A stretch of DNA of 64,000 nt from Heptranchias perlo (GCF_035084215.1 NC_090363.1:9300001-9364000); one strand, 5' to 3'. Positions 31,509 to 59,970 are shown, numbered from the stretch's first letter. Numbers and translations are program-made. Notes: generated from the sequence alone by a model not told the origin.

Positions 31509-31596
31509 ATGTCGGAGCGCACTATGTACGGGAGAATAAATCCCTTTAAATTCACCAATATTTTCCTTTTCATCAGTTATTTTATTTCCCTCTCCG
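31509..31596 (+). CDS. Exon 1 (signal peptide) of a single-IgV ITIM-bearing CEACAM/HEPACAM-like receptor
   Basis: ATG at 31509 opens MSERTMYGRINPFKFTNIFLFISYFISLS, with a hydrophobic leader core. It ends in a phase-1 donor G|gtaagt at 31596/31597, the typical IgSF leader-exon arrangement, and the phase matches exon 2. Confidence 0.8.
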
Positions 31597-31714
31597 GTAA
31601 GTTTTTTTTTCTCCCCTTTCTCTTCTAGTATAAATGTAATTATATTTCTCAGTTCCCTTTGACTGTGTGACTGTTTTGTTGACTGTGTTTAATCAGGGCG
31701 GGGATCCCATCCAT

Positions 31715-34140
31715 CTTCAACTATCCGAATATAGACTGGGATAGTAATAGTGTAAAGGGCAAAGAGGGGAAAGAATTTCTGACGTGTATTCGGGATCCAG
31801 CCCAACGAGGAAGGTGGCGATGCTGGATCTGGTTCTGGAGATGAGGGGGGGGTCAAGTGCAGCAAGTGTCAGTGGGGGAGCATTTAGGGAACAGTGATCA
31901 TAATATCATTAGGTTTAGACTAGTTATGGAAAAGGACTAGGAGCAACCTAGAGTAATAATACTCAATTGGAGGAGGGCCAATTTCAGTGGGTTGAGAATG
32001 GATCTGGCCCGGGTAAATTGGAATCAAAGATTGGAAGACAAAACTGTGATCCAACACGGGCGGTCTTTAAAGAGGGGATGGTTTGGGTACAGTCTCGGTA
32101 CATTCCCATGAGAGGGAAAGGTAGGGCATCTAAAACCAAAGCTATCTGGATGCCGAAAGAGATAGAGAGTAAGATGAAGCAGAAAAATGGGGAGTATGAC
32201 AGATGTCTGGTTGATAATACAAGTGAGAACCAGGCTGAATATCGAAAGTACAGTGAAGAAGTGAAAAATGAAATAAGAGGGGCAAAGAGAGAGTATGAGA
32301 ATAGACTGGCGTCTAACATAAAAGGGAATCCAAAAGTCTTCTATAGGCATATAAATAATAAATGGGTAGTAAGAGGAGGGATGGGACCGTATTAGGCACC
32401 AAAAAGGAGATGGCAGAAGGCATGTCCGAGGTACTAAATTAATACTTTGCATCTGTCTTTACCAAAGAAGAAGATGCTGCTAAAGTCACAGTAAAAGAGA
32501 AGGTAGTTGAGATACTGGATGGGCCAAAAATTGATAAAGAGGAGGTACTAGAAATGCTGACTGTACTCTAAGTAGATAAGTCACCTGGTCCAGATGGGAT
32601 GAATCCTAGGTTGCTGAGGGATATAAGGGTGGAAATTGCAGAGGTGCTGGCCATAATCTTCCAATCTTCCTTAGATATGTGGGTAGTGCCAGAGGACTGG
32701 AGAATTGCAAATGTTACATCTTTGTTCAAAAAAGGGTGTAAAGATAAACCCGGCAACTACAGGCCAGTTAGTTTAACCTCGGTGGTGGGTAAACTTTTAG
32801 AAATGATAACCAGGGACAAAATTACTAGTCACTTGGACAAGTTTGGATTAATTAAAGAAAGCCAGCATGGATTTGGTAAAGGCAAATTGTGTTTAACTAA
32901 CTTGATTGAGGTTTTTGATGAGGTAATAGAGAGTGTTGATGAAGGCAATATGGTTGATGTTGTGAATATGGCCTTCCAAAAGGCAATTTATAAAGTGCAA
33001 CAAAATAGGCTTGTCAGCAAAATTGAAGCCCATGGACTAAAAGGCAGAATGGATACGAAATTGAGTAAGTGGCAGGAAAGAGAGAGTAGTGGTGAACGGT
33101 TGTTTTTCGGACTGGAGGGAGGTGTACAGTGGTGTTCCCCCGGGGCCGGTACTAGGACCACTGCTTTTTTTGATATATATTAATGACTTGGACTTGGATG
33201 TACAGGGCACAATTTCAAAATTTGCAGATGACACAAAACTTGGAAGTGTAGTAAACAGTTATAGACATCAAGAGGACATAGACAGACAGACTGGTAGAAT
33301 GGGAGGACACATGGCAGATGAAATTTAACGCGGAGAAATGCGAAGTGATACATTTTGGCAGGAAGAACGAGGAGAGGCAATATAAACTAAAGGGTACAAT
33401 TCTAAAGTGGGTGCAGGAACAGAGAGATTTGGGGGTATATGCGTACAAATCTTTGAAGGTGGCAGGGCAGGATGAGAAAGCAGTTAAAAAAGCATACGGG
33501 ATCCTGGGCTTTATAAATAGAGGCATAGAGTACAAGAGCAAGGAAGTCATATTGAACCTTTATAAAACACTGGTTCAACCACAACTGGAGTATTGTGTCC
33601 AATTCCGGGCACCACACTTTAGGAAGGATGTGAAGACCTTAGAGAGGGTGCAGAAAAGATTTACTAGAATGGTTCCAGAGGTGAGGGACTTCAGTTACGT
33701 GGGTAGACTGGAGAAGCTGGGGTTGTTCCAGTTAGAGCAGTAAAGTTGAGAGGAGATTTGATAGAAGTGTTCAAAATCATGATGGGTTTAGATAAAGTGA
33801 ATAAAGAGAAACTGTTCCCTTTGGCAGAAGGTTGGAGAACTAGAGGACACAGATTTAAGGTGACTGGCAAAGGAACCAAAGGCGATGTGAGGAAAAACTT
33901 TTTTACGCAGCGAGTTGTTATGATCTGGAATGCGCTGTCTGAAAGGGTGGTGGAAGCAGATTCAATCATGGCTTTCAAAAAGGAATTGGATAAACACTTG
34001 AAGGGAAAAAAATTGCAGGGCTATGGGAAAGAGTGGGGGAATGGGACTAACTGGATTACTCTTACAAAGAGCCGGCACGGGCTCGATGGGCCGAAAGGCC
34101 TCCTTCTGTGCTGTAACCATTCTGTGTTTCTATGATTCTA
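31715..34140 (+). mobile_element. 5'-truncated CR1 LINE (about 2.4 kb; end of endonuclease plus RT, disrupted) in intron 1
   Basis: FNYPNIDW, SDHNII, VPEDWRIANVTSLFKKG..PGNYRPVSLTSVVGK, QHGF.KGK.CLTNL, GVPPGPVLGPLLFLIYINDL, FADDTKL, LEYCVQF; stops and frameshifts; (attct)n tail. Confidence 0.97.
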
Positions 34141-34666
34141 TTCACTCACTGATCTAAAGTAAATGAAGCTGAACTCATCCCTGAGATCTTCAGTCTCATT
34201 CAGTCAGGCTTCTGTGAATAGGTAGAATCCCCATCACCATCTGCTGTTCAACACTGTGAGTTACCTGAACTCCCAACTGTAGCTGGGATTTATTAATGAA
34301 TTAACTGACCTCTCACAAGTCTTTATTCAATGGTTATTTAATTATTAATGTGTCAGATGTTCGTGTGTGTTTTATAAATTGGATTAATTAGAACAGTTGG
34401 ATCTGAGCATATAATCTAGCTTGTCACTTCAGTTCAGAACTGATGGAGCGCTACACTGTCGATATCCCTCTACCACTTCAATTAGAGTTAAATGATCCTG
34501 TGGAACTATTCAAAGAAGAGCAGGGAGTTCTCCAGTGTCCTGGCCAAAATTTATCCTTCAATTAATGCCTCTAGAACAGGCTAGATGGTCGTTTATCTCA
34601 TTTGCAGTGTGTAGCCAAATTAGCTGTGGTGTTTGCTACAGTTGTTATTTTTGAAGTGTAGTCGTT

Positions 34667-35444
34667 GGGCCAAAATTTGCTGTCAAAGTAACAGCAAGGC
34701 TAATAACACTCGCCGTTATTAATGGGTAAACGGTACAGCAACTTTAGGTGATGAGCAGATGCGTGGTTAAATGTGAATATCCAAAAGTCGCTATCCGAAT
34801 TGCCCTGCTCCACCGTTAACTTTGCAAAAACAGCATCTCACCCTTCGCTTCCCTGTTTTTTTTAAGAACTTGCTGTATTTTCCCATTAATTGCGCATTAA
34901 ACTCACCACAGAAAGTTAAGTCTTCCCGTTATAAGTGTAAGTATCCTTTTAATGACATGATAAATGCCAATCAACCTCTCTGGCACCAAAAATTAACTAC
35001 TATAAATGTGGAGTCTCATTCCTTCAGGTTTTGAATTTTTGGGGGAGATTTTGAAAATGTCCAATTTTAAATTTTAAATTGTTTTTTTCTTACTTTTCCT
35101 TTCTGTCTCTTTTCTCTCTCTCTCCTAATCCAATGTTTCTTTCCCTCTCTTTATTTCTCTTTCTGTATCTGATTTGATATTGAATTCACTCCCTTTAATT
35201 CACTCTCCTTCTCAGTCCTTCCGCTGTTTATTTCTCAATATTTAAATCTCACTGATTAAGAAGATACCCTGTTTTTTACCCTGTTCACTACGGTCCCAGA
35301 TGCACTGTTTCCCTTGTTGCCCTGTTACCAGCTCACACTTTCAGCAACTTTGTGGGCTAAATGTTTTTTGATCTGAAGCATGCAGGGGGCAAGTCTAATT
35401 AACGGCAGACGCCATTAGATGCCCTGCTACAGAAAATTCTGGCC
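34667..35444 (+). mobile_element. Non-autonomous Harbinger-like element, about 780 bp
   Basis: TIRs GGGCCAAAATTT / AAATTCTGGCCC; 3-bp flanks GTT/ATT; inserted in a SINE remnant. Confidence 0.8.
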
Positions 35445-35659
35445 CATTGTTGTTCCGCAGACAAAATGCTTTGGGATGCACTGAGGAAATACAACGTTTG
35501 GTATAAATGCAAGTTCTTATTTCCTAACTCTGTCCTGACGTTACAGGTGTTTTGTGATTACAAACTAACGGGATTTGGGCTGTCCTGAGGTTGTGAAAAG
35601 AGCTATATGAATGCAAATTCTTTTGTTTTTGAGTTAAATCACAACCTACCTTAAAAGCA

Positions 35660-36985
35660 GGGATTTGGGTGTCCACGTAAACAAATCACTAAAATCAAGT
35701 GCACAGGTACAAAAAGTAATCAAAAAAAGCTAATGGAATGTTGGCCTTTATCTCAAGGGAGGCTGGAACACAAAGGGGAGGAAGTTACGCTTCAGTTGTA
35801 TCGAGCCTTGGGTCAGACCCCATCTGGAGTATTGCCTTCAATTTTGGGCACTGCACCTCAGGAAGGATATGTTGGCCGTGGAGGGGTTATAGTGCAGATT
35901 CATCAGAATGATACTGGGACTTAAAGGGTTAACTTATGAGGCCAGTTTGCATGAGCTTGGTTTGTATTCCCTTGAGTTTAGACAGTTGAGGTGTGTAGGC
36001 GGGTTTTTCCGTTACTGTCGCAACAAAGGGTAGTTAGTCCTTCAACGAGAATTTCTGCGCAATTCAGGTCCGAGTGGTTATTCAACACCAAGTTTTAATA
36101 TTGACTTACTACAGTGTATTAATAAACTGTCTTCAGATTACATTAAATGACGAGCAATTAATACAACCTGGTTCCTGCGGACTCAGGATTGATCAGACTC
36201 GTCCTTCATAGGCTGCCTTTTGGCCATGGACTTCCAACTGTCCTGAGAGCTCTAACTTTTGGGAGGGAGCCTGCCCTATCTTTATAGTATTCAGCTGCTA
36301 TGTTCTGCACGTAAGCATCTCTTAGTTGTTGGTTATCCCACCAGGCTGACGCCACCTTAGCAACTCAAGATGAGCTGTTTCACGTAGCGTAACTAATTAC
36401 CTCAATCTTCATCTCTGTTTTGTAAACTGTTTGTTCCTCTCAGGAACGCGTAGGTCCTTGGTTACCACATCCCTTGTCTGGGTGCAGACTCTCTCATGTC
36501 CTCGCCCCCACCAGTATTGCTCTCTTGCCTGGATCCGATGTGAGACGGGAGACTTGACTGTGCTTGTTTTAAACCATATTCTTATCAGGGGTAATCTAAT
36601 CTAATCTAAACTGTGTTTAAAATGATAAAGTGATTCGAGAGGGTAGATACAGGGAAACTATTTCCTCTGGTGGGGACATCCAGAACAAAGAGGCACAATT
36701 TTAAAATTAGAGCGGGGCCATTCAGGAGTGAAATGAGAAAACACTTTATCACACAAAGGGTGGAGGAAATCTGAAATTCTCTTCCCCCAAAACACTGGGG
36801 ATGCTGGGTCAATTGAAATTTTCAATCATGAGATCAACAGATTTTTATTAAATAAGGGTAATGAGGGATATGGATCAAGGGCAGGTAAATGAAGTTGAAG
36901 TATAGATTTAGTAATGATTTAAATCGTAAGGTGGAACAGGCTCGAGGGACTAAATAGTCAACTCCTGTTGCTATGTTCCTATGTA
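35660..36985 (+). mobile_element. CR1 3' fragment interrupted by a solo LTR
   Basis: LQLYRAL..HLEYC..FWA; the CR1 sequence resumes at 36588 in register with the consensus. Confidence 0.88.
35994..36587 (-). mobile_element. Solo LTR related to 252-902
   Basis: The reverse complement begins tgataagaatatggtttaaaac, shares tataaagatagggc..ctcccaaaagttagagctctc and gttgcgacagta, and ends CA. Probable 4-bp TSD GGTG/GGGG. Confidence 0.8.
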
Positions 36986-37147
36986 CTCTGTCTGCTTTTA
37001 ATGTAACTATTAACCCTTTTATTTTAATGTTTCCACTGGACTATATTAAGAGTTTGCATGTTATACCATCAACTGTAATCTCTAGTTTATAATTGTTATT
37101 ACTGTAAACCAATGATTTGTGTGTGTAATGAACTTAAAGACTTAATG

Positions 37148-37335
37148 AACGGGGACCAGAGGGAATCTCCCCGCTGTATTTATAAAGTCAGTGTCAGAGA
37201 GAGAGATCAGAGGGGACCTTCCTGCTGTGTTTATAATGTCACTGATACACACAGAGAGACCAGAGAGAATCTTCCCATAGTGTTTATAATGTCACTGACA
37301 CAGAGAGAGACCTGAGGGAATCTTCCCACTGTCAC
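37148..37335. repeat. Degenerate about 55-bp tandem repeat (3-4 copies)
   Basis: gagagaccagagggaatcttccc..tgtgtttataatgtcactgac repeated. Confidence 0.75.
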
Positions 37336-37539
37336 AATTACAATGATCGGAGGGCTGAGTCTCCCAAATTTAGTAAGTCAGTTCTGTGAGCTGAAACTGA
37401 AATGTTGGGTTAACAAAAAGTAAAAAAAAACTGCAGATGCAGGAAACCTAAATCAATAGCAGAAAATGGTAGAGACATTCAGCAGGTCAGGCAGCATCTG
37501 TGGAGAGAACACAAGTCAATCGGCATCTTGGGTATAGAC

Positions 37540-37885
37540 GGCTAGGTAGTGTAGTGGTTGTGGTACTGGACTAGTAATCCAGGCGGCTTGGACTAATAAT
37601 TTAGAGAATGTGAGTTCGAATCCCACCTTGAGAGTTTGAATTTAGTTTAAAAAGCTGGTACCAGTAAAAGAGATTGTGAAGCTGTCGGATTGTGGTTAAA
37701 AACCCAACAGGTTCACTAATTCCCTTTACCCAATCTGGCCTATATGTGACTCCAGTCCCACACTAACATGGTTTACTCTTAACTGCCCTCTGAAGCCACT
37801 CGGTTGTATCAAACCTCAAACCACCAGGATTTTCTTTGGACAACTAGGGATGAGCAATAAATGGCTGCATCCTAAGAATTAGTAA
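37540..37885 (+). mobile_element. tRNA-derived SINE (second family)
   Basis: A box tagtgtagtggtt, B box gagttcgaatcc; its 3' tail (actagggatgagcaataaatg) is shared with the second LINE family. Confidence 0.78.
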
Positions 37886-38416
37886 AAATTGAAATATATT
37901 ACAGATGGTACAGCATTTAAAGAGGAACAGAACAAGGGAATGGGGAGAAAGTGCACAACCACACACAGGGAAATAAACAGAATGACCTGTAAAGTGATGG
38001 GTGATTTTGGCAGGAGACAAAAGGAGGTGTAATTAGAGAAATAAAAGCCATTCACAAGGCAGACTGGTTGTTGTTGAGTTTGTGCGATAGTGTAAAAAGG
38101 GTTATAGTGAGTCGGTGGCCCGCTTTACATCACTCCCGATTGACTTCAATGATAATAAAAATGGGGAGATATATAAAGGGACTGCTGACTCTCCAGCTCA
38201 CTGTTGCACAAAGTCAAGATCTACCCCTCTATGTCTTTGATTTCATTCATTCTGCTTCCTTTTGTCTCCTGCCTGTATCAGTTCTGCCATTAAACCATCT
38301 CCTGTTCCCCGCCTAAAGGTTTTACCGGTTTTATTTTTCCTGTATGTGGGTTATTGTCCGTTCCCCTCCCACTTTCCCTTGTTCTGTTCCTTTTTAATTG
38401 CTGTTCCATCTGTAAC

Positions 38417-39149
38417 GGGCCAGAATTTACTGTCAAAATATCGGTGAGGCTAACAGCACTCACTGCTATTTATGCACACATCGCACAGCAACTTCAGGCG
38501 AGGGGCAGATGCGTGGTTAAACGCGGAAATCCAGAAGTTGCTGTCTGAGATGTTTCTCGCTGTCTGACTCACCGTTTGAATCCATCGAACAGAGTGAGGT
38601 TCCTGTACTTGCATGGGAGATACAAACTAAACTCACAGAAAGTTAGGGCTCGTCTGTTTCAGTCTATTTCAGTCTCTTTTTAACGGCGTGGTAAGTCTTA
38701 ATTACTGCCAAACAACCTCTACCACTGAAAATTAACTCTTACAAGCGTGGAGTCTCATTCCTTCAACTTTTAATTGTTGGAGATCTAAAAGAAACAAATA
38801 TTTAAATTAACTTTTTAAAAAACTTTTTCTTTGTCTCTTTTTCTCTCTCTCTTTTAATCCATTTTTTTCCCCCTCTCTTTATTTCTGTGCCTGGTTTTGA
38901 TATTGAATTCACTGTTCTAACTTACACTTCAGACTCTGTGCTGTTCATTAACAGGCCTTCAATCTGATTGATTAAGGAGATACACAGTTGCTTGCCCTGT
39001 TCACACAGGTCCCAGATGCCCTGTAGAGGGCACCTCGCCTTTGCCATCTGGCATCTACAGCAACTCGCTGTGCAAAAGCTCATGGAAATTAATCGGGCGA
39101 AGGGAAGGCAGGCTCTGTTCCTTCACCGGCTTACAGTAAATTCTGGCCG
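38417..39149 (+). mobile_element. Non-autonomous Harbinger-like element, about 730 bp
   Basis: TIRs GGGCCAGAATTTACTG / CAGTAAATTCTGGCCG; flanks AAC/AAT. Confidence 0.8.
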
Positions 39150-39330
39150 AATATCTCCCTAAGGAATATCTGAAACGTCGACTGATTTTCGATATCTCCA
39201 CAGCCGCTGCCTGGGTGTCTCAGTCCTTCTCTGTTTTTTTCTTTCGGAAACGTCGGGTGACTTACTGATGGGAGAACATTGCATTATGTGATTACAAACT
39301 CATTTAACTTTTGTTTCTGTTTTGTTGCAG

Positions 39331-39729
39331 CCTCTGGAAGCCGAGTTACTGTGAGAGTCGATCAGAGTGAAGTGAATGGGACCGTGAACCAGTCTGTCCT
39401 CCTCCCCGTCTCCTACTCCTACTCCACGCTCACACTAAAATACTCCATTTTAACGATAAAGTGGTTTTTATTCCCCAGCGATACCCCATGCGCGACACTG
39501 ACCCGATTAAACTGCTCTCTAACCCCTGACAAATCCGGTTATAACTGTTCAGATCACCAGCAAGACGGTCCTGCCTACAAGCACCGAGTCCACATCTACC
39601 CGGAGAATGGATCTTTATTGCTGCGGGATTTGCAGTCCAATGACAGCGGCGTGTATGTGATATCTGTTTCTCGCGGTGGGGAAACGGCCAGTGAAGGAAA
39701 TGTGACATTAACAGTCTATCCAGAGACAG
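39331..39729 (+). CDS. Exon 2: IgV-like N domain without canonical cysteines
   Basis: Acceptor tttgttgcag|, donor G|gtagga, phase 1-1, 399 nt. Translation ASGSRVTVRVDQSEVNGTVNQSVLLPVSY...IKW...YKHRVHIYPENGSLLLRDLQSNDSGVYVISV...GNVTLTVYPET shows V-set hallmarks (C-strand W, NGSLLL, DSGxY, TLTV). Confidence 0.93.
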
Positions 39730-40136
39730 GTAGGAATTCACAGTCTGTCTATTTCACCCACGGGATACGTGGTACAATTATTTCAACGTGTAACTATCAG
39801 TATTGGGAAATGGGGTGGAAATTGGACGTGGCCGGGGACTTAAAACAGAAGGAATCGCGTTTGCCGATATTCAGTGATTCAGACAATAGGACTGAATATC
39901 GCGCGGTGCTTGTTACTGGCGACCGATGAGTTACCGCCTGTTTCGCTTCCCGGCCCGCGCCCAATTTCACCCCTATCGTGTTTATTTAATCGAATTGACC
40001 CCAATTTTCCAGGGTTTAACTATAAGTAATTCTACATTCGCGCCTGATAACCATGTCATTGCTGATAGGTTTACCGTTAAACCCTGGTCCTTTTGGCCCC
40101 AGATATTAGAATAATCCAAGTGTTTTTTTTTTGCAG

Positions 40137-40301
40137 CCAGTGAGTATTCTACTACCCCAAGTGTTTCAGGGTCAGCGGAAAACAGCACAACGGGCCCAGA
40201 CAAGTGGGAGAACACCCTGTATATCAATGTGTCCACTGCCGTGTGCCTCCTCATTATCATCATCACCTGCTTGTGCCTGTTGGTGATCAGGACACACAGA
40301 G
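40137..40301 (+). CDS. Exon 3: Ser/Thr stalk plus transmembrane helix
   Basis: Acceptor tttttttgcag|, donor G|gtaagt, phase 1-1, 165 nt. Encodes ASEYSTTPSVSGSAENSTTGPDKWENTLYINVSTAVCLLIIIITCLCLLVIRTHR (hydrophobic helix followed by basic stop-transfer residues). Confidence 0.92.
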
Positions 40302-40499
40302 GTAAGTGGCTGCTCTTGGTAATTAGAAGTTGCAACAGTTACAACAATTAGAAGTTACAACAAAAGTCCCTCTCCTGGCTCTGGTTAGTTTAATAGGGGC
40401 TAATTTTAACTTTGGTTGATGGTCTAAAATGGGCAATATCGATTTGGCCGTCTGTTATACCTACCCCGCCCAATTTTCACTGCTATTGAGTTGAATGGA

Positions 40500-41612
40500 A
40501 AAAGTGCAAACCCATCGTGCCCAGTAGTGTAAATCAATAGTTCACATCCAGCAGTCGTGCAAATCAGTGGTTCATGTCTATTTTAGAAGGGTTAAGATCT
40601 CCCCTAAACTAACAGATAGAAGACTATCTTACCAATGCCCTAAGTGTTCATTCGCCTAACATCTCAAAGGCTTCCCCTTCATTTCTTTAAGACTCACTCC
40701 CTCTACCTACAAGCCTGAGCTACAGCCCATCGATCTATCATTAAAATATCAGCTCACAGGGAAGGATATCAGCCAGGGGCCACTGGTGAAATGAGAGAGG
40801 CCACGTACTGCGCCAGGAGCGAATGCCCCACGGCAATCTGTTCACGTGTATTTGCTCCGGGCGGGAGCATGTAATGGGTGGCTAATTTGATATCGCCGGT
40901 TATCGTTATTGCTGGTTTTACACGATCGCCCACAGTTGAAATTACAACCTATAGTCAGAATGCCACAGAATGAACCAACTGGCGAGCGGCCATTCAGAGA
41001 TTGTGTTCAGCCCGTGGGGTGGGGAGTGAGTGTCGTTCAGTTTCTTCACGGCCCCGATCCTCCTCCCCGTCCTTCACTCCAACTTTAGATGATCATCTGG
41101 TATACGGTTGCTCTGGATGCCCTTGGTCTCCCTTCTCCCCATTGGTCCTGAGTGTTTCCAGGCAGGGTAGAGGGCTTCCCTTCCAAAATGCCGCCTATAA
41201 GGAATGGGGGGGGGGGAGGGTCAGGGTGATGGTCCGAGAGTGGATCGCTGTTGAACGGAGAATGCCCAGAGCTGATTGCCGTGGGGCTTTCGCTCCTGGC
41301 GCACTACATGGGCTCTCTCATTTCACCAGTGGCCCCTGGCTAATATCCTTCACTGTGAGCTGATATTTTAATGATAGATCGATGGGCTGTAGCTCGGGCT
41401 TGTAGGTAGAGGGAGTGAGTCTTAAAGAAATGAAGGGGAAGCCTTTGGGATGTTGGGCGAATGAACACTTAGGGCATTGGTAAGATAGTCTTCTATCTGT
41501 TAGTTTAGGGGAGATCTTAACTCTTCTAAAATAGACATGAACCATTGATTTGCACGACTACTGGATGTGAACTATTGATTTACACTACTGGGCATGATGG
41601 GTTTGCACTTTT
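40500..41612. repeat. 339-bp inverted repeat (arms 40500-40838 and 41274-41612, 435-bp spacer)
   Basis: The arms are reverse complements of equal length, with only scattered substitutions by eye. Confidence 0.95.
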
Positions 41613-41899
41613 ACAAGTTGTGTTACACTGCTACTGAAAATGATGGTGCAGAAGAATTACACCACCAAAGCTATTTGGTGGTGAACAGTAAGACACAATT
41701 ATGGCATTTCTGAATTAGTGCCAATTTTTGTGTGTGTTCAATTAAAATGTATGCTCAACAAATATTGGTAAATGAGGAACTGATTTTGTACCTAATTATG
41801 GAAATTCTTACAGTCTCACTTTGTTAGGTCGGACCGATTTTTAACCATTAACTGTCGGTGTAACCCCAGAGATTAGGGCTTGGTGCCTGTTGTAATTAT

Positions 41900-42205
41900 A
41901 GGGAATCAGGAACAAGGGAGCACAGTTTTAAAATTAGAGCTAGGCCATTTAAAAATGGAACCAAGAATCACTTTTTCACACAAGAGAGTGGAAGAAATCT
42001 GGAACTCTCTTCCCCAAAAGGCTGTGGATGCTGGGGGTCAATTGGAGCTTTCAAGACTGAGATCGATAGATTTTTGTTGGGTGAGGGTATCGAGGGATAT
42101 GGAGCAAAGGCGGGTAAATGGAGTTGAGGTGCAGATCAGCCATGATGTAATTGAAAGGCGGAACGGGCTCGAAGGGCTGAATGGCCTCCTCCTGTTCCTA
42201 TGTTA
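41900..42205 (+). mobile_element. CR1 3' end
   Basis: FSHKRVEEIWNSLPQKAVDAG; 3' UTR gggctgaatggcctcctcctgttcctatg. Confidence 0.88.
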
Positions 42206-42451
42206 CTAATTGATAACCAACCAATGCTATCCATGGCTGAAAGAAATTAAAATAAGTCCAATTACCGAATACAAAATTGGAACATACAGTGACCAATTAA
42301 AAAGTATTAACAGTGTCACACTGCAGGTGTGGCTGTCTGTTTCTGCCATCTCTTTATATAGGAGTGTCTTTATCACGTTGTAAATATCTTTTAAGTTTAA
42401 TCATACATGCGATGCAAGAAATTGTGTTCCTGTCTGAATGTTTTAATTCAG

Positions 42452-42531
42452 GTCGTCATCCACCCCGTGATTCAGTCGTCACAGAAACACCGTCTGCTCA
42501 GCCTGAAGGAACGAGGCAAGCCTTGGCTGAG
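42452..42531 (+). CDS. Exon 4: membrane-proximal cytoplasmic exon
   Basis: Acceptor ttttaattcag|, donor GAG|gtacga, 80 nt, phase 1 to 0. Encodes GRHPPRDSVVTETPSAQPEGTRQALAE and is required to bring exon 5 into the ITIM-encoding frame. Confidence 0.75.
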
Positions 42532-42635
42532 GTACGAGGGGAGTGGGTTAGCAGGGCTCGCGATTCTTTTCAAAAAAATAAGCACTATCAATTTTCACAA
42601 ATGTGATTCTTCCTCCCCGGGGCCTGATTCTCCGA

Positions 42636-42880
42636 GGGGGCGATTTTAACCCCCAAGAACGGGTGGGTTGGGGGCGGGTGGGAGTTGAAAATAATTGTTT
42701 TTTTTGGGTCGCAATTGCAAAATTTTCAAACTTTGCATTCCCAGTGGGAAGCCTGGACTTTTACCCACGACGTTAAACCCGGAAATAAAGCCGGGTTGTG
42801 GTTGCGATCCAAAAAACAACTATTTTCAACTCCCACCCGCCCCCCCAACCCACCTGTTCTTGGGGGTTAAAGTCACCCCC
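42636..42880 (+). mobile_element. MITE (12858 family)
   Basis: Full-length, long TIRs. Confidence 0.9.
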
Positions 42881-42999
42881 CTAATGTCTGACTTACTACA
42901 AAACAGTCCAGATAATATGAACAGATCCCAAAGCCTTTTTTCCCCCTGTTACCTGTACCAAGAGAATTCCCTGGTGAATTCCGAATTGAAATCTGGATG

Positions 43000-43365
43000 A
43001 GGGACTTCAGTGATGTGGAGAGACTAGAGAAGCTGGGAATGTAACCCCGCTATTCGAGAAAGGAGGGAGAGAGAAAACAGGGATCTACAGGCCAGTTAGC
43101 CTGACATCAGTCGACGGGAAAATGCTGGAATCCATTATTAAGGAAGTGGTAACAGGGCACTTAGAAAATCATAATATGATTAGGCAGAATCAACGTGGTT
43201 TTATGAAAGGGAAATCGTGTTTGACAAACCGATTAGAGTTTTTTGAGAATGTAACTAGCGGGGTAGATAAAGGGGAACCAGTGAATATAGTATATTTGGA
43301 TTTTCAAAAGGCATTCGATAAGGTGCCACGTAAAAGGTTGTTAAGCAAGATAAGGGCTCATGGGG
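43000..43365 (+). mobile_element. CR1 RT fragment
   Basis: QRGFMKGKSCLTNRLEFFENVTS.VDKGEPV.IVYLDFQKAFDKVP. Confidence 0.9.
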
Positions 43366-44219
43366 TGCTGTCTATATATATATAAATATAGCGAAACAAA
43401 GAATTATCAGTACAGTAGCCACTTTGCGGCTGATTGCCCATGGAAATGGCGAGGACAACTTGAACAAGTCGTAGCTTGGAGCATTGGGGTGGTGGGTCCT
43501 CTCTCATGGGCTTTTATTGGGAGTGCTGATCCAATATGTGAGAGGCAGATGCGACCTCACTTAGTACAGGTGAATTTGGAGTATGTCGTTGCAGGTTGCT
43601 TGTCACTTTACCGTCTCTTTTTCTTCTCTCCTGCACGGGCTGCCTCCAAAAGTCGCAACGGTTTTGGTGAATGATGATTCGGTTCCCTTATCCCATCTGC
43701 AGCGAGCTCCTCCCAGGATTCCGCATTGACGTCAAAACTTTTTAGGTTCCCTTATAATGATTGACCTGTCCCTCCAAGGGAATGTTTGTCCTATTTTAAC
43801 TGGGAGTAGAAGGGGGCACCAGGTTATCAGAGATCCTGAAGAGATAGCAAGACCGCTTCAACTGAGAGCAAATCAGCATGTCCTCAATCCCTGACAGGAC
43901 AGCTCCAGCCAGGACCTCACTGTTAGCAATCTTGTCTTGTCAGCTGAGGAGTGAGCAGGACAGTGGGATTGTTCTAGCAAAGAGCTGGCACAGGCGCAAT
44001 GGGCCGAATGGCCTCCTTCTGTTCCTATGTTCCTCCCGTGCGTAGACAGGCAAAAGCTGAGCCGTTTTGTACCCACTTGTCGGACAACTTTCCACATCAG
44101 AGCTTCTGAAAGATGAGACGTTAACTAAAACGGTAAACCTCCCTTTCCTCTTTTAGTTGCTGACTGACCCATTATGCATTTTCAACATTCTGTAAGCTTC
44201 CCTTTTCTGTTCCATACAG

Positions 44220-44366
44220 GGTCAGGAATTGGTCATCAATGGTGAGGTCACGTACTCATATCTGCATTGGTCTGGGCCCATAAACACACCAGCACCAGAA
44301 CCCGACACTAGCGAGGCACCGCCTATGAATATATATGCTTTTGTGCAGAAAGTGGAGCGAAAGTGA
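44220..44366 (+). CDS. Exon 5: terminal exon with ITIM (VTYSYL) and ITIM/ITSM-like (NIYAFV) motifs
   Basis: Acceptor ccttttctgttccatacag|, phase 0. Encodes GQELVINGEVTYSYLHWSGPINTPAPEPDTSEAPPMNIYAFVQKVERK*, with TGA at 44364-44366. Confidence 0.88.
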   Translation, partial: GQELVINGEVTYSYLHWSGPINTPAPEPDTSEAPPMNIYAFVQKVERK

Positions 44367-45049
44367 AGTGCCTGAGCTGAAGCATTCGACAGGGAACTGG
44401 ATCGACCTCCTGGTCCGGAAGGAAGAGGTGGACACCGGGTATCGAGGTGGGAGAAAGGCGAGAGCCCAGATGTGACGATCGGCCCCATTTGAACGGTTAG
44501 AGGCCGTGAAACCCGTGCACTTACACGGGGGCTGCAGTGAAAGGACACGTACCGCCCATGGGACACGCTGAGGTGCGATATAGCACCGGGCATGATCATG
44601 GGGTCCCGAGCCAGCCAGCGAGCGCCATTGGTTGGCTCCTCGGAATGTAGCCGTGGCGTCAGAGCCCCATCAGCTGCGAGTTCCTGACGTCCTTCAGAAT
44701 ATTGGGGGTGGATCTTGACTTTGCGCGATGGTGTAGAATGGGTGACAGAGAGTCGGCAGCCCATCTCACGTCACTCCCCATCTTTATTTCTATTGACTTT
44801 AAGATCTGCCCCTTGGAGCGCGCCAGAATCGCAGATTTAGCGGGTTCCAGATTTGGTCACACTTCTGTTTGAGAGGGGTGGGGAGGGGAGGGTGTGCAGG
44901 GGGGGGGGGGTCCACAATGGCTGTTTCCCAGCTCTCAGCGGCTGTGTTGAAGGCGCTTCTGGTTTTGTAAAAGTTTGAATCAACTTTATGACGTATTCTT
45001 TGTACAAAAGTTTACAGTCACTGCAGCCACAGAGGGAGAGTCGTAAAAA

Positions 45050-48359: not shown

Positions 48360-48892
48360 GCCCTGATAATCCAGTCCATCCTACAGCCCGAGATCCTATG
48401 GTAATCCAGACCAATCCACAGCCCAGGACTCCATGGTAATCCAGTCCATCCTACACTCTGGGATCCCCTGGGAATCCAGTCCATCCTACACTCTGGGATC
48501 CCCTGGGAATCCAGTCCATCCTACACTCCGGGATCCCCTGGGAATCCAGTCCATCCTACACTCCGGGATCCCCTGGGAATCCAGTCCATCCTACACTCCG
48601 GGATCCCCTGGGAATCCAGTCCATCCTACACTCCGGGATCCCCTGGGAATCCAGTCCATCCTACACTCCGGGATCCCCTGGGAATCCAGTCCATCCTACA
48701 CTCCGGATCCCCTGGTAATCCAGTCCATCCTACACTCCGGGATCCCCTGGGAATCCAGTCCATCCTACACTCCGGGATCCCCTGGTAATCCAGTCCATCC
48801 TACACTCCGGGATCCCCTGGTAATCCAGTCCATCCTACACTCCGGGATCCCCTGGTAATCCAGTCCATCCTACACTCCGGGATCCCCTGGGA
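48360..48892. repeat. 35-bp minisatellite (also 50690-51060 on +, 47380-47600 on -)
   Basis: Unit GATCCCCTGG(G/T)AATCCAGTCCATCCTACACTCCGG; period 48481 to 48516. Confidence 0.96.
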
Positions 48893-51800
48893 ACCCAAAT
48901 GCTGGAAATCTGAAACAAGAACAGAAAACGCTCGGGCGGTCAGTCTGCACCTATGGGGTGAACAGAGGAGTTAATGTTTCAGGTGTGGAGTCCTCATCAG
49001 AACTGTAAGAAATTACAGGGGAACAACATTTAATAATGGAACTGTATTAAGGGAAGGGGATAATATTAGGGGCAGAGAGCTGCAAACTGCCCTAAGACCT
49101 TAACTATAACTCCCAACTGACTCTTCGGCAGGGAGTGCTGGTGATGTGGGATGGATGTGCCGGTGGTTTGATTGGGAGAGGGATGGGGACCCTCCTTCGG
49201 AACGTCTCCTTTAGGTCCGTCCTTAAAACCCAGCTCTTTAACCGAGCTTTGAGTCACCCCTCCTAATATCTCCTGCTTTGTCTCGGTGTCCATTTTTGTC
49301 TGATTAGGCCTCTGTGAAACGCCTTGGGATGTTTTCCTACATTAAAACGCTGTACAAACGCAAGTTGGTGTTGTTGATGGAGTCTGCGACAAGGTTTTTT
49401 TTTTGCATCTTTGGTTATTTTTGTGGACTTAATTCATTGGTTGAGCTTCTGCCCGTATGTGTGATGCACTGAAGGGGCAGCAGAGGGCAGTGCTGAGTCA
49501 CCAGCTGGAAGCTCGGAAGTTTTCTCCAAACGCTCAGCTTGTTGGGTTCTGTGTATCGAGCCATTGTAAATAAAGGTTGGCTGGGACTTTCCGTTTCAGC
49601 TCTCCTGATATACCCAGGATCAGATATCAGGAAATGCTGCACCTCTGAACTCATGGTTTTTCCCAACCATTCATTTTCAATGTATACTTGTAAACAAAGG
49701 CGACCAACAGATTGAGATACACTTATTATGGTCTCCTTGATTATAAATCTGTTGAGTCTTTGACCTGTTGAAGGAGAGCTGCAGAATCTTAGCAAAAGTG
49801 ACCTCTTGTAAGGATTTTGAAGGGCTGGGCCACGGGCCTCTCACTCCTGGGGATGGGGAGGTGGTGATTTAGGAATAGAAGGCAAGATTCTACCTGGAGG
49901 GCGGGAGAGATTGAGAAACAGATAGAGAGAGACATTGACAGAGAGAGATGGAGAGGGAAAGGGAGTGGGAGAGAAAGCGACAGAAGGGGATGTGCTGTTG
50001 CAGTTACTGCTTAGACCAATATTACAGACTGTCATTAAGTACTCTCCGTCCTACATTCATAACCATTTTGGAGTTTTGTCCTGAAGGAACTGTTATCCAG
50101 TGCTTGCATGGCCCTTCACACTGGAATGCGCTAAAATTTATAATAAACAACAATTTGTTAAACGGCGGAGGCAAATAAATACTTAAACACAATTTGATTA
50201 AGGGAAGAATTTAGAGTTAAATAGTAAAACTGATTTGGGCAATTTGCGGAAAGCTCCCAGTTCCTCATCCCATACTGCAGAAAAATATCTTTCAAAAAAT
50301 CTGGGGTTAATTTTAACCTGGGAGGAGTCTCGTGTGGAGAATAAACACCAGCATGGAGCAGTTGGGCCGAATGGCCTGTTTCTTTGCTGTAAAATTCTAT
50401 GTAGTTCCACGTCCTGTAGCAAGGCTGGCTCTCCGAGGCTGTTTCCTTTCTGCTCCCTCACTGCTTCCCCCCACCCATGTGAGGCTCATAATGAGGCTGA
50501 GAAGAAGCTTGGAAGTTGCCTGAAGAACTCGGAGCCTGAAGATTAATCTTTTTTTTTTAAAGGGACATAATTTATCCTGGTGTGTATTATTTTGGTAGGT
50601 TTTTTTGAAAAAACATCTGTGAGTCACGGAGCCCTGTTTGTGCATTGATATCATTTCTTTGCATTAATGATGTTCACTCTGCACTGTGGAAGCCCCTGGT
50701 AACACTGTCCATCTTACAACCTGGGACACCCTGGTAAAAAGGTCCACCCTACAGCCCGGGATCCCCTGGAAATCCAGTCCACCCTACAGCCCGGGATCCC
50801 CTGGAAATCCAGTCCACCCTACAGCCCGGGATCCCCTGGTAATCCAGTCCCTCCTACAGCCCGGGATCCCCTGGAAATCCAGTCCACCCTACAGCCCGGG
50901 ATCCCTGGGTAATCCAGTCCACCCCACAGCCCAGGATCCCCTGGTAATCCAGTCCCTCCTACAGCCCAGGATCCCCTGGTAATCCAGTCCCTCCTACAGC
51001 CCGGGATCCCCTAGCAATCCAGTCCCTCCTACAGCCCGGGATCCCCTGGAAATCCAGTTCTCGAAGTCCAGGGAACCCAGTGCCATTTGCCACTTTTCCT
51101 GTAAATATTGTGGGCCTGGGGGTTTGGGATGACCTGGTTTTTAGTCCTTTTGGTGGAAATCAGAACACAAAGATTGGATTGTTTCAGCAGCTTGAGACAG
51201 AGTCAAAGCCACGGGAATATGGATCTAAACTCTACGCCTGCTCTCTGAGGCTTCCTGGGGCAACACACGAGGACAAAAGGTGCTCAGTCACAAAGAGGGA
51301 GCACAGGGCACGAAACCCTTTTTGACACCGTTCCGCACACTGTCAGGGTAATAAACGATCGGGAAATCAACAGAAAGCAATAAAAACGGCTGGAAATCTG
51401 AAACAAGAACAGAAAACGCTCGGGCGGTCAGTCTGCACCTGTGGGGCGAACAGAGGAGTTAATGTTTCAGGTGTAGAGTCCTCATCAGAACTGTAAGAAA
51501 TTACAGGGAACAACATTTAAAAATGGAACCGAACGAAGGGAAGGGGATAATATTAGGGGCAGAGAGCTGAAAACTGCCTTAAGACCTTAACTAAAACTCC
51601 CATATGTCTCTTTGGCAGGGAGTGCTGGTGATGTGGGATGGATGTGCCGGTGGTTTGGTTGGGAGAGGGATCGGTTGATGCTTGGGATGGGTACCCTCCT
51701 TTGGAACGTTTCCTTTAGGTCCGTCTTTAAAACCCAGCTCTTTAACCAAGCTTTGAGTCACCCCTCCTAATATCTCCTGCTTTGTCTCGGTGTCCATTTT

Positions 51801-58655: not shown

Positions 58656-59519
58656 AACTAAGAATTGAAGGGGATAACATTTCCACAGAGCGTCCCTCTA
58701 AGGTACTTATCACATTGACAGCGTGACTAATAAACTGCCCATGGTATTGCTTGTGGTCACTCAATGGATAAAAGGTTTTTCCTACATACAGGAGGGCAAG
58801 GAGAGTTCAGAAACTGGCTCCACACCGTCGCCTACTGGCCGAAGCCTGAAATCACACCGTCACAGGCAACTGTTTGTAAACATTCTAAATGTTTACATAG
58901 GCAGTTTTAACATTAAATGTTACCTTAAAAGCACTCCTGTGAAAGGATGTTTTCCTAAGTGAAAGGCGCTATATAAATGCAAGTTGTTGACGACTAAAAA
59001 TTGCGACAACAGGAAGCCCATGTAAACACGGGGAAATTTTAACTTTCGGCGGCAGTGTAAAACGGACGATATTGGGTCAGCTGCCTGTTATAAACCTCGT
59101 CTGATTTTCCTTTCTATTGACTTCAACGGAAATGAAAATCGGGTGATGTGACAATGGGCGGCTGATCTGATATTGCCCGTTTTACACTGTCACCGAAAGA
59201 TACAATTATCCCCCTGTGTTTTTAATATATAGATGGATGTAGCAAGGTCATTCTTGCTGTTTCCCCGGCATGAGAACTTCATGAACACATCACAAAGTGC
59301 CTTCGCATACAATAAATTGCTGTGAAACACTGCCTTTCTTGTGATGTAAGCAAACACAGCAGCCGTCTTGAGAGCAGTAATGTCCCTCCAGCATCAATGA
59401 GGTGCCCAGTGCCTGATGGAATGCTTCTGCTGATTGAGGCCCCTCGGTGCTGACTGTATCTGGTGGTCAACCTGGCAGTTTCGTGGTTGAATTTTTGCAA
59501 TGGTCTGCTCAGAGATCCG

Positions 59520-59970
59520 GGCCTACCTCAAAGTTCCCTGATGAGGTGACCCTGCCCCTTTAACTGGTAAAAGTTGAGCCTGTCTGAAAGTTCATTTTTG
59601 AGGTGATACTGCCCCTTTAGCTGGTAAACGCAGGGCCTATCTGACAGCTCCCTAATGAGGTCACACTGCCCCTTTAACTGGTAAATGTGGGGCCTATCTG
59701 ACAGCTCCCTGATGAGATGACACTGCCCCTTTAACTGGTAAATGTGGGGCCTATCTGACAGTTCCCTTTTGAGGTGACACTGCCCCTTTAACTGGTAAAT
59801 GTGGGGCCTATCTGACAGCTCTCTTTTGAGGTGACACTGCCCCTTTAACTGGTAAATGTGGGGCCTATCTGACAGCTCTCTTTTGAGGTGACACTGCCCC
59901 TTTAACTGGTAAATGTGGGGCCTATCTGACAGCTCTCTTTTGAGGTGACACTGCCCCTTTAACTGGTAAA
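59520..59970. repeat. 57-bp tandem repeat, about 8 copies
   Basis: Unit GAGGTGACACTGCCCCTTTAACTGGTAAATGTGGGGCCTATCTGACAGCTCTCTTTT; period 59771 to 59828. Confidence 0.95.

What the first reader, a model, noticed from the sequence alone, without database searches (positions are those of the whole stretch)
31509..44366. Hidden 5-exon gene for a single-IgV inhibitory receptor (CEACAM/HEPACAM-like) in a probable shark genome
Seen: five exons with GT-AG sites and consistent phases (1,1,1,0) splice into an uninterrupted 292-aa ORF (leader, IgV, S/T stalk, TM, tail with two tyrosine motifs). The ORF track shows only parts of it. Intron 2 is only 407 bp, leaving no room for an IgC exon, so the ectodomain is one V domain. 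Known: a single IgV plus ITIM/ITSM tail is the design of checkpoint and paired receptors (PD-1, CD300a), while a Cys-less V domain marks CEACAM, CD2/SLAM, HEPACAM and VSTM5. Inference: this combination may be a lineage-specific inhibitory receptor of cartilaginous fish without a clear mammalian ortholog.
Basis: partly seen in the sequence, partly recalled or inferred. Interest (0 to 1): 0.85.

Follow-up and report, generated by a model that had tools for sequence, protein, structure and literature searches.

The report
Shark single-IgV ITIM receptor gene
This is a real, expressed shark gene for a small cell-surface receptor with one antibody-like domain and an inhibitory signalling tail; it is already an uncharacterised gene model in the public annotation and belongs to a shark and ray family of matched inhibitory and activating receptors.

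Summary
The five-exon model is correct. Exon by exon it translates to all 292 residues of RefSeq XP_067830148.1, "hepatic and glial cell adhesion molecule-like" of Heptranchias perlo. The gene is therefore annotated already, not hidden. Spliced contigs from four runs of one sample show junctions 2/3, 3/4 and 4/5. Junction 1/2 was not tested with reads; it rests on homology and on the RefSeq model.

The protein has a leader, one V-set domain (Pfam E 1.4e-8), a stalk, a transmembrane helix and a tail. The tail holds one canonical ITIM (VTYSYL) and a conserved distal tyrosine (NIYAFV) 27 residues later. The V domain lacks the canonical disulphide but keeps another conserved cysteine pair.

Same-build models occur in at least 15 shark, ray and skate species. 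Four species also have a partner with an arginine in the membrane helix and a short tail. In three of them, V domains of the inhibitory and activating genes are 91-98% identical within a species but about 84-85% between sister taxa, so the V exons have been homogenised.

CEACAM1-L is the closest named analogue. Family membership is unsettled, and HEPACAM, SLAM/CD2 and PD-1 fit worse. This is a new member of a known kind, of moderate interest.

The parts
31509..31596 (+). Exon 1: ATG, 29 codons plus 1 base, leader peptide, donor GTAAGT, phase 1
   Evidence: Sequence. Identical to residues 1-29 of P0178. tblastn of the Heterodontus and Carcharodon proteins hits 31524-31598, 64% of 25 aa, E 0.002 and 0.001. 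A leader profile matches it at E 0.026, with the match ending at the donor. The junction to exon 2 was not tested with reads.
31597..39330 (+). Intron 1 (7734 nt), with a reverse-transcriptase fragment and a relic leader-like exon
   Evidence: RVT_1 at E 1.1e-7 on ORF 32599-33183. Leader-like stretch at 34820-34897.
34820..34897 (+). Leader-like relic (LCKNSISPFASLFFLRTCC...) with no ATG, preceded in frame by TAA; not part of the coding model
   Evidence: Best match in the window to the profile of six homologue leaders, E 7.9e-5 among 2592 six-frame fragments. Sequence.
39331..39729 (+). Exon 2 (399 nt): V-set Ig domain with 7 N-glycosylation sequons, no canonical B/F cysteines, and a Cys61/Cys72 pair
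   Evidence: Pfam V-set E 1.4e-8, 35.3 bits against a cut-off of 26. AF2 model with pLDDT 91.6 and V-type strand order. Column counts. Contigs cover it in all four runs.
39730..40136 (+). Intron 2 (407 nt), holding no Ig exon; also covered by unspliced contigs
   Evidence: Joint 39729/40137 in X1 and X2. Unspliced records 2, 11, 18 and 23.
40137..40301 (+). Exon 3 (165 nt): Ser/Thr-rich stalk, transmembrane helix (about 40232-40288, no charged residue), then RTHR
   Evidence: Sequence. Hydropathy maximum 2.7. Identical to residues 164-217 of P0178.
42452..42531 (+). Exon 4 (80 nt): membrane-proximal part of the tail
   Evidence: Sequence. Joints on both sides in spliced contigs, sides up to 80. 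Aligns with the same tail segment of homologues.
44220..44366 (+). Exon 5 coding part (48 codons plus TGA): ITIM VTYSYL at 44247-44264 (Tyr256) and distal NIYAFV at 44328-44345 (Tyr283)
   Evidence: Sequence. Both tyrosines are invariant in 11 of 11 inhibitory-type homologues. Spacing 27.
44367..44874 (+). 3' untranslated region, at least this long
   Evidence: X1 record 8 (763 letters) carries 474 letters beyond 44400. X2 record 12 carries 189.

Best explanation
The locus is a real, transcribed five-exon gene, most likely in the sevengill shark Heptranchias perlo. It encodes a 292-residue type I membrane protein: leader, one heavily glycosylated V-set domain, a short Ser/Thr stalk, an uncharged transmembrane helix, and an ~80-residue tail.

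It is the inhibitory-type member of an IgSF family found throughout sharks, rays and skates. In that family an ITIM-tailed gene is matched in some species by an activating-type gene. The activating-type gene has an arginine in the membrane helix and a short tail, and the V exons of the two genes are kept alike within a species.

Shown: the gene structure, three of the four splice junctions, the V-set fold, conservation of the motifs, and the paired pattern in other species.

Inferred: after the V domain binds a ligand, a Src-family kinase phosphorylates Tyr256 (ITIM) and Tyr283, and SH2 phosphatases of the SHP-1/SHP-2 type dock and damp activating signals. This is the way CEACAM1-L and other ITIM receptors work. 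The ligand is unknown.
For: - Exons equal P0178 (XP_067830148.1) residue for residue.
- Spliced GT..AG joints for junctions 2/3, 3/4 and 4/5.
- V-set domain by Pfam and a confident V-type model; the fold search returns IgV domains only.
- VTYSYL fits the ITIM consensus S/I/V/LxYxxI/V/L as quoted in PMC13278318, section 11.
- Both tail tyrosines are invariant in 11 of 11 aligned homologues. They lie 22-27 residues apart in 15 of the 16 models checked; the Amblyraja model gave no motif pair.
- Same-build models exist in 15 other elasmobranch species.
- Arg-in-TM, short-tail partners exist in Hemiscyllium, Chiloscyllium punctatum, Scyliorhinus canicula and Leucoraja.
- Within-species V identity between inhibitory and activating genes is 92.3, 97.7 and 91.3%. 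Between sister taxa it is 83.8-85.4%. The post-V parts are 90.2% (inhibitory to inhibitory), 90.2% (activating to activating) and 19.6% (inhibitory to activating).
- Ten of 11 exonic differences in the RNA contigs change the amino acid, and six cluster in the F-G loop.
Against: - No functional data of any kind exist.
- Read support comes from contigs of one sample and one study, called RNA only by guess, and possibly the individual that was assembled.
- The 2/3 joint has only 27 letters on its short side, and X4 shows no spliced joint.
- The exon 1 junction is untested by reads, and a better leader-profile match without an ATG lies at 34820.
- The distal motif NIYAFV fits neither ITIM nor ITSM. 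In the orthologues position +3 is A, P or S, so tandem-SH2 docking is uncertain.
- No activating partner lies in this 64-kb window, so pairing is not shown for this genome.
- The within-species V similarity rests on RefSeq protein models only. I had no DNA with which to test gene conversion.
Confidence: 0.72

Rival explanations
1. It is the elasmobranch CEACAM1 proper: a true member, or orthologue of the ancestor, of the CEACAM family in a minimal N-domain-only form.
For: - Among solved structures, CEACAM N domains dominate the sequence hits of this V domain. Only an LRIG1 Ig domain scores slightly better (4.7e-6). CEACAM8 scores 6e-6, CEACAM6 1e-5, CEA 1.8e-5 and CEACAM1 3.8e-4, while CD48 scores 0.048 and PD-1 does not appear at E<=1.
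- The canonical disulphide is absent.
- Human CEACAM1 has ITIMs VTYSTL and IIYSEV at Y459 and Y486, which is 27 apart. The distal tyrosine is 6 residues from the C-terminus, followed by KKQ (table in PMC7226588; passages in PMC8564729). Here the motifs are VTYSYL and NIYAFVQKVERK, 27 apart.
- A short tail exon whose length leaves remainder 2 on division by 3 (80 nt here) parallels the 53-bp CEACAM1 exon (PMC13278318, section 11).
- CEACAM1-like genes are said to exist in cartilaginous fish on the basis of little-skate ESTs (PMC3628338 and PMC4079198 passages).
- RefSeq names three relatives CEACAM3-like or CEACAM5-like.
Against: - The Hemiscyllium orthologue P0005 finds no CEACAM in the PDB at E<=0.01, only JAM-A.
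- The family profile scores JAML (1e-9) above CEACAM6 (2.8e-8).
- The fold search gives generic IgV hits such as VCBP3 and PD-L1, with no CEACAM among the rows shown.
- The tyrosine spacing is 27 in only 6 of the 15 models where a motif pair was found, and 22-25 in the rest.
- The activating partners use an Arg in the TM rather than an ITAM in the tail.
- The V domain's bird relatives include duck and chicken genes, where Zimmermann and Kammerer found no complete CEACAM gene.
- Synteny could not be tested.
Confidence: 0.35
2. It is a HEPACAM-family adhesion molecule, as the RefSeq name says.
For: The RefSeq name of P0178, and HECAM, HECA2 or HEPACAM-like names on 9 of the 120 rows. By recall, the HEPACAM V domain also lacks the canonical disulphide.
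Against: - These names are automatic.
- HEPACAM has an IgV plus an IgC2 domain and a long tail without an ITIM (recalled). Here there is no IgC exon, and the tail is an ITIM tail.
- Most family members are simply 'uncharacterized'.
Confidence: 0.05
3. It belongs to the CD2/SLAM family, whose V domains also lack the disulphide and whose tails carry tyrosine switch motifs.
For: - The nearest Atlas cluster carries Receptor_2B4 in 23% of its members.
- One of 43 aligned relatives matches Pfam Receptor_2B4.
- The bird relatives have two TxYxx[VI] motifs.
Against: - The only CD2/SLAM hit in the PDB is CD48 at E 0.048. None appears among the 60 rows shown of the 69 hits of the profile search at E<=0.01.
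- There is no IgC2 domain.
- The shark tails have an ITIM, not an ITSM.
Confidence: 0.06
4. The tyrosine motifs serve sorting or endocytosis (YxxΦ), or adhesion signalling, and the protein is an epithelial adhesion or pathogen-binding molecule rather than an immune inhibitory receptor.
For: - YSYL and YAFV also fit YxxΦ.
- CEACAM1 itself is epithelial and adhesive (abstract of PMC13278318).
- No tissue information is available because the runs are coded.
Against: - The full ITIM context (V/L/I at -2, L/I at +3) is kept in 15 of the 16 models checked.
- Arg-TM partners with matched V domains are the hallmark of immune paired receptors.
Confidence: 0.15

Closest known systems
[quoted passage not shown]
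   Same: - N-terminal V-type domain without the canonical disulphide.
- Best-scoring family of V domains among solved structures.
- Tail with VTYS.L, then a second tyrosine 27 residues on, close to a basic C-terminus.
- Phase-1 Ig exons.
- A short frameshifting tail exon.
- Family members that form inhibitory/activating pairs with V-exon homogenisation (PMC5112662 passages).
   Different: - No IgC2 domains.
- A conserved extra cysteine pair in a long C'-C'' hairpin.
- Leader not split one third onto the V exon.
- Two rather than three tail exons.
- The distal motif is not an ITIM or ITSM.
- Activating partners use a membrane arginine instead of an ITAM tail.
- Similarity is weak and not reproduced by an orthologue.
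- Synteny unknown.
Xenopus group 1 Ceacam paired receptors (ceacam301/303)
   Same: An ITIM receptor and an activating paralogue whose N exons are kept alike by gene conversion. The authors state that group 1 N domains are closest to cartilaginous and bony fish CEACAM N domains, at about 35% identity (PMC5112662 passages).
   Different: The Xenopus activating members carry ITAM-like tails.
HEPACAM / HEPACAM2
   Same: The automatic RefSeq name of this very protein. By recall, a V domain without the canonical disulphide.
   Different: HEPACAM has an added IgC2 domain and a long non-ITIM tail (recalled). Here there is one V domain and an ITIM tail.
Paired receptors with an adaptor-coupled activating member (KIR, LILR, SIRP, CD300 type)
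   Same: An ITIM-tailed inhibitory gene together with a short-tailed partner that has a basic residue in the membrane helix, and near-identical ectodomains.
   Different: The Ig domain lineage is unrelated. No adaptor has been shown for the shark partners.
PD-1 / CD300a design (single IgV plus tyrosine-motif tail)
   Same: The overall build: one V domain, a stalk, a TM helix and an inhibitory tail.
   Different: No sequence kinship: no PD-1 hit at E<=1. Those V domains keep the canonical disulphide (recalled).

Membership tests
CEACAM family | N-terminal IgV-like domain without the canonical B-F disulphide | tested here: met
   There is no Cys at either canonical column in 19 of 19 aligned family members. 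However, a different Cys pair (61/72) is conserved in 19 of 19; by recall, CEACAM N domains lack such a pair.
CEACAM family | Specific sequence kinship of the V domain to bona fide CEACAM N domains | tested here: inconclusive
   This gene's own V domain hits CEACAM8 at 6e-6 and CEACAM6 at 1e-5. The family profile scores JAML at 1e-9 and CEACAM6 at 2.8e-8. Orthologue P0005 hits no CEACAM at E<=0.01. The fold search is generic. No tree with reference sequences could be built.
CEACAM family | [quoted passage not shown] | tested here: not met
   Exon 1 encodes 29 leader residues, and exon 2 starts at (A)SGSRVTV, near the likely cleavage site. This is judged by reading; no signal-peptide predictor was run.
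CEACAM family (CEACAM1 type) | Last tail exon with an ITIM plus a second ITIM or ITSM | tested here: inconclusive
   VTYSYL is a canonical ITIM. NIYAFV has N at -2, so it is neither ITIM nor ITSM. The spacing of 27 equals that of human and mouse CEACAM1, but orthologues vary from 22 to 27.
CEACAM family (CEACAM1 type) | Long/short tail isoforms by skipping a frameshifting tail exon | tested here: inconclusive
   Exon 4 is 80 nt. By my reading, skipping it would give a stop after 8 codons of exon 5. No 40301/44220 joint appears.
CEACAM family | Locus syntenic with LIPE, TOMM40, BCL3 and other markers | not testable with these tools
   No other gene was recognised in the 64-kb window. No shark chromosome could be fetched.
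CEACAM family | Activating paralogues carry an ITAM or ITAM-like tail | tested here: not met
   The four activating-type homologues have an Arg in the TM helix. Their tails are 16-27 residues long, apart from an 85-residue tail without motifs in Scyliorhinus canicula.
HEPACAM family | IgV plus IgC2 ectodomain | tested here: not met
   Exon 2 is spliced straight to the stalk/TM exon, and the 407-nt intron holds no Ig exon.
CD2/SLAM family | V plus C2 ectodomain and ITSM (TxYxxV/I) tail | tested here: not met
   There is no C2 exon and no ITSM in the tail. The best CD2-family PDB hit is CD48 at E 0.048.
Paired inhibitory/activating immune receptors (functional class) | ITIM member and charged-TM member with near-identical ectodomains in one species | tested here: inconclusive
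   Met for homologues in Hemiscyllium, C. punctatum and S. canicula. No partner lies in this window, and the rest of this genome was not searchable.
V-set immunoglobulin superfamily | Match to the V-set profile above its curated cut-off, and a V-type fold | tested here: met
   PF07686 at 35.3 bits against a cut-off of 26. AF2 pLDDT 91.6 with strands A to G including C' and C''. Foldseek top hits are all IgV domains.

The most novel reading that the evidence does not exclude
The gene marks an undescribed, ancient IgSF family that may be the elasmobranch form of the ancestral CEACAM1-like inhibitory receptor. In this family, an ITIM receptor and an adaptor-coupled (Arg-TM) decoy have their ligand-binding V exons homogenised within each species. 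If so, pathogen-driven coevolution of paired receptors would date to the base of jawed vertebrates. The clustered, mostly amino-acid-changing variants in the F-G loop of this very gene would then be a trace of ongoing selection or gene conversion.
Probability: 0.3. Interest if true: 0.55.

Novelty: new member of a known kind. Interest (0 to 1): 0.35.

Why it matters
Printed evidence for CEACAM-like receptors in cartilaginous fish is thin. In what I read, it comes down to a few little-skate ESTs. My four literature searches found no description of this family.

This work adds three things. It gives a confirmed gene structure. It shows a family present in all major elasmobranch groups sampled. 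It also shows the signature of paired receptors: matched V domains on opposite signalling chassis.

Together these give comparative immunologists a concrete system for asking how old receptor/decoy arms races are. The gene itself, however, is an existing RefSeq model, and its design is a familiar one.

Tried and rejected
- **Exon 4 search.** A blind scan for exon 4 by splice signals gave 399 candidates and was useless. A filter on the polypyrimidine tract missed the true exon. It was found from the required length of 80 nt and the ORF.
- **Paralogues in the window.** tblastn with the exon peptides and with 11 homologues found no second V, TM or tail exon.
- **Contig start at 39330.** I considered using the start of a contig at 39330 as evidence for the exon 1 junction. 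I rejected it because the variant at 39360 explains the break equally well.
- **Tail-only protein search.** It reached only close sharks, 6 of 8 candidates, so it says nothing about CEACAM tails.
- **Atlas search.** It gave only generic V-set clusters.
- **Fold search.** It gave generic IgV hits.
- **Chicken relative.** P0012 finds nothing in the PDB at E<=0.001.
- **Earlier scan notes.** Searches by sequence and by words gave nothing relevant.
- **Not possible here.** Synteny was also not possible.
- **Supplements not seen.** Supplementary files were not opened for Chang 2013 (Fig. S2), Zimmermann and Kammerer 2016 (Additional file 1, tail alignments) or the 2026 preprint. They may hold cartilaginous-fish CEACAM sequences that bear on membership.
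- **Joined product not searched.** Each exon was searched separately.

Full report

Each has AG/GT borders, and the intron phases are 1,1,1,0. Intron 2 is 407 nt.

I searched and translated each exon separately and left out the joined step. Exon 2 is a V-set Ig domain: Pfam PF07686, E 1.4e-8, 35.3 bits against a cut-off of 26. Exons 3, 4 and 5 have no Pfam match above cut-off.

A database search with a homologue's V domain returned a 292-residue RefSeq protein, P0178. This is XP_067830148.1, "hepatic and glial cell adhesion molecule-like", from Heptranchias perlo. The five exon translations match its residues 1-29, 31-162, 164-217, 219-244 and 245-292 exactly. The three split codons give the missing A30, A163 and G218.

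The window most likely comes from that hexanchiform shark, and the gene is not hidden from annotation.

**2. Transcript evidence**

One search found four runs, X1-X4. They come from one sample and one study, are kept as contigs, and are labelled RNA only by guess. Laid on 39200-44400, they show three GT..AG joints:
- 39729/40137 in X1 and X2. The shorter side is 27 letters plus 3 ambiguous, which is under the tool's 31-letter rule.
- 40301/42452 in X1, X2 and X3, with sides of 26, 80 and 71.
- 42531/44220 in X1 and X2, side 80.

One 645-letter contig in X2 runs from the end of exon 2 through exons 3, 4 and 5 into the 3' UTR. X4 shows no spliced joint.

Unspliced contigs also cover intron 2 in all four runs. 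Two contigs read through the exon 2 acceptor into intron 1. Pre-mRNA, retained introns or some DNA are therefore present.

Exon 1 rests on three things:
- the RefSeq model;
- tblastn hits of the Heterodontus and Carcharodon proteins at 31524-31598 (64% of 25 residues, E 0.002 and 0.001);
- a weak leader-profile match that ends exactly at the donor (E 0.026).

**3. What the protein looks like**

The AlphaFold model of exon 2, built with a 43-row alignment, has pLDDT 91.6. It shows a V-type strand order with a long C'-C'' hairpin at residues 52-63 and 70-78.

In an alignment of 19 family members, neither canonical cysteine position holds a Cys (0 of 19 at each). Cys61 and Cys72 are present in 19 of 19, and they face each other across the predicted hairpin. 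Cys53 is unique to this gene. 'Cys-less' is therefore only half right.

The V domain carries seven N-glycosylation sequons, and the stalk/TM exon carries two more. The membrane helix has no charged residue.

The tail holds VTYSYL (Tyr256), which fits the ITIM consensus quoted in PMC13278318, section 11. It also holds NIYAFV (Tyr283), which fits neither ITIM nor ITSM because of the Asn at -2.

**4. The family**

A full HMMER scan of 1.84 billion representatives with exon 2 found 288 proteins at E<=1e-3, 87 at E<=1e-10 and 14 at E<=1e-30.

The closest are RefSeq models with the same build (leader, one V domain, stalk, TM, tail) and 256-320 residues. Nearly all are named 'uncharacterized'. They come from:
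- sharks: Hemiscyllium, two Chiloscyllium species, Stegostoma, two Scyliorhinus species, Mustelus, Carcharodon, Cetorhinus and Heterodontus;
- rays and skates: Pristis, Narcine, two Mobula species, Rhinoraja, Amblyraja, Leucoraja and Hemitrygon.

Exons 2-5 align collinearly with these models. Both tail tyrosines are invariant in 11 of 11 inhibitory-type sequences. Among 16 models checked, 15 have the ITIM followed 22-27 residues later by an (I/V)Y motif that lies 7-9 residues from the C-terminus. The Amblyraja model gave none. The spacing is 27 in 6 models, 25 in 1 and 22-23 in 8. Three ray and skate models carry the module twice, with an inner copy that lies 46-49 residues from the end.

**5. 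Paired receptors**

Four loci have an arginine in the membrane helix: Hemiscyllium LOC132832679, a C. punctatum 217-residue model, S. canicula LOC119976513 and Leucoraja LOC129716097. Their tails are short or lack motifs.

| Comparison | Identity |
|---|---|
| V domain, inhibitory vs activating, within Hemiscyllium | 92.3% |
| V domain, inhibitory vs activating, within C. punctatum | 97.7% |
| V domain, inhibitory vs activating, within S. canicula | 91.3% |
| V domain, same type, Hemiscyllium vs Chiloscyllium | 85.4% and 83.8% |
| V domain, S. canicula vs S. torazame | 84.1% |
| Post-V part, inhibitory vs inhibitory, Hemiscyllium vs C. punctatum | 90.2% |
| Post-V part, activating vs activating, Hemiscyllium vs C. 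punctatum | 90.2% |
| Post-V part, inhibitory vs activating, within Hemiscyllium | 19.6% |

In the Hemiscyllium/Chiloscyllium comparison the two gene types are therefore older than the species, yet their V domains have been kept alike within each species. This is the pattern described for CEACAM1/CEACAM3 and for Xenopus ceacam pairs (PMC5112662 passages). No such partner lies in this window.

**6. Which known family?**

*For CEACAM:*
- The gene's own V domain finds CEACAM8 (6e-6), CEACAM6 (1e-5), CEA and CEACAM1. These score ahead of TCR alpha and CD48 (0.048), and no PD-1 hit appears at E<=1.
- The tail resembles human CEACAM1-L, with VTYSTL and IIYSEV at Y459 and Y486 (27 apart) and a C-terminus of ...YSEVKKQ (table in PMC7226588; passages in PMC8564729).

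*Against, or neutral:*
- The Hemiscyllium orthologue finds only JAM-A.
- The family profile puts JAML first.
- Foldseek returns generic IgV domains.
- The leader split differs from that of CEACAM genes.
- The activating partners use a membrane arginine instead of an ITAM tail.
- The more distant relatives form a large set of bird, turtle and crocodilian models. After the first 27 rows, which are all elasmobranch, these rows are mostly 'uncharacterized'. Nine of the 120 rows are named HECAM, HECA2 or HEPACAM-like, none is named CEACAM, six carry no name, and none names a mammal.
- These relatives include duck and chicken genes, in which Zimmermann and Kammerer report no complete CEACAM gene (PMC13278318, section 11).
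- Three relatives elsewhere are auto-named CEACAM3-like or CEACAM5-like.

Synteny, the criterion those authors use, could not be tested. I therefore file the gene as CEACAM1-like in design, with membership undecided. HEPACAM fails because its IgV plus IgC2 build is absent here. CD2/SLAM fails because there is no C2 domain, no ITSM and only a weak CD48 hit.

**7. Mechanism**

Shown: a glycosylated single-V type I membrane protein with a conserved ITIM and a second conserved tyrosine.

Inferred from the established behaviour of ITIM receptors: ligand binding at the V domain leads to Src-family phosphorylation of Tyr256 (and perhaps Tyr283), recruitment of SHP-1/SHP-2-type phosphatases, and damping of activating signals. 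[quoted passage not shown] The Arg-TM partners would signal the opposite way through an adaptor.

In the RNA contigs, 10 of 11 exonic differences from the window change an amino acid. Six of them lie within 24 nt of the F-G loop, while the adjoining intron 2 shows one difference. This suggests a variable binding face, an allele or a conversion tract. With a single sample, I cannot tell which.

**8. Novelty and verdict**

The gene model already exists in RefSeq.

I found no description of this elasmobranch family in four full-text searches. What I read about cartilaginous-fish CEACAMs amounts to little-skate ESTs. I saw only passages, an outline and named sections of these papers, and no supplements.

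The gene is a new member of a known kind, the paired Ig-like receptors of CEACAM1-like design. Interest is moderate.

Noticed in passing
window 34820-34897 (+): A leader-like stretch (LCKNSISPFASLFFLRTCC...) in intron 1 is the window's best match to the family leader profile, E 7.9e-5. It has no ATG and follows an in-frame TAA. It is probably the relic first exon of a lost or converted paralogue.
   Followed up: partly
window 13186-13344 (+): A weaker leader-like match (QFTPLFLLPSCV, E 0.0086) lies far upstream. No V exon follows it in the window, and it may be chance.
   Followed up: no
window 39670-39693 (also 39360, 39393, 39540, 39562, 40197): RNA contigs differ from the window at 11 exonic places, and 10 of these change the amino acid. 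Six lie within 24 nt at the F-G loop (S143Y, R144S, G145S, S150R, E151K and one silent change). Intron 2 next to them shows one difference. This could be an allele, a paralogue or a conversion tract.
   Followed up: partly
window 39730-39929: Contigs in all four runs cover intron 2 unspliced. The frame stays open for 66 codons into the intron, so a retained-intron transcript would encode a soluble V-only protein.
   Followed up: no
window 32599-33183 and 43122-43385 (+): Reverse-transcriptase fragments (Pfam RVT_1, E 1e-7 and 8e-8) lie in introns 1 and 4. Bins 41984-42331, 42854-43375 and 43898-44071 have summed contig depths in the thousands to tens of thousands, which indicates high-copy repeats.
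   Followed up: partly
window 4866-5919, 9793-12083, 48361-48897, 50693-51058, 59519-59970: Long tandem arrays: 41 bp x 25.7 copies; G-rich units of 21 and 20 bp, x 40 and x 74 copies (GC about 0.70); 35 bp x 15 copies; 70/35 bp; and 57 bp x 8 copies.
   Followed up: no
window 7041-7265 and 7274-7416: Two runs of N (225 and 143 bases).
   Followed up: no
proteins P0172, P0166, P0013 (other sharks); P0153, P0183, P0185 (rays, skate): RefSeq isoform models in three sharks skip the stalk/TM exon, which would give TM-less products. Mobula and Rhinoraja models carry the ITIM-plus-distal-tyrosine module twice.
   Followed up: no
window 39489-39491 (Cys53 of the V domain): A third cysteine is unique to this gene: 1 of 19 family members has it, and the others have F, L or I. 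It would be unpaired if Cys61 and Cys72 bond with each other.
   Followed up: no
window 40301 / 44220: By my reading of the sequence, skipping the 80-nt exon 4 would shift the frame and end the protein 8 codons into exon 5, removing both tyrosine motifs. No such joint appeared in the contigs.
   Followed up: partly
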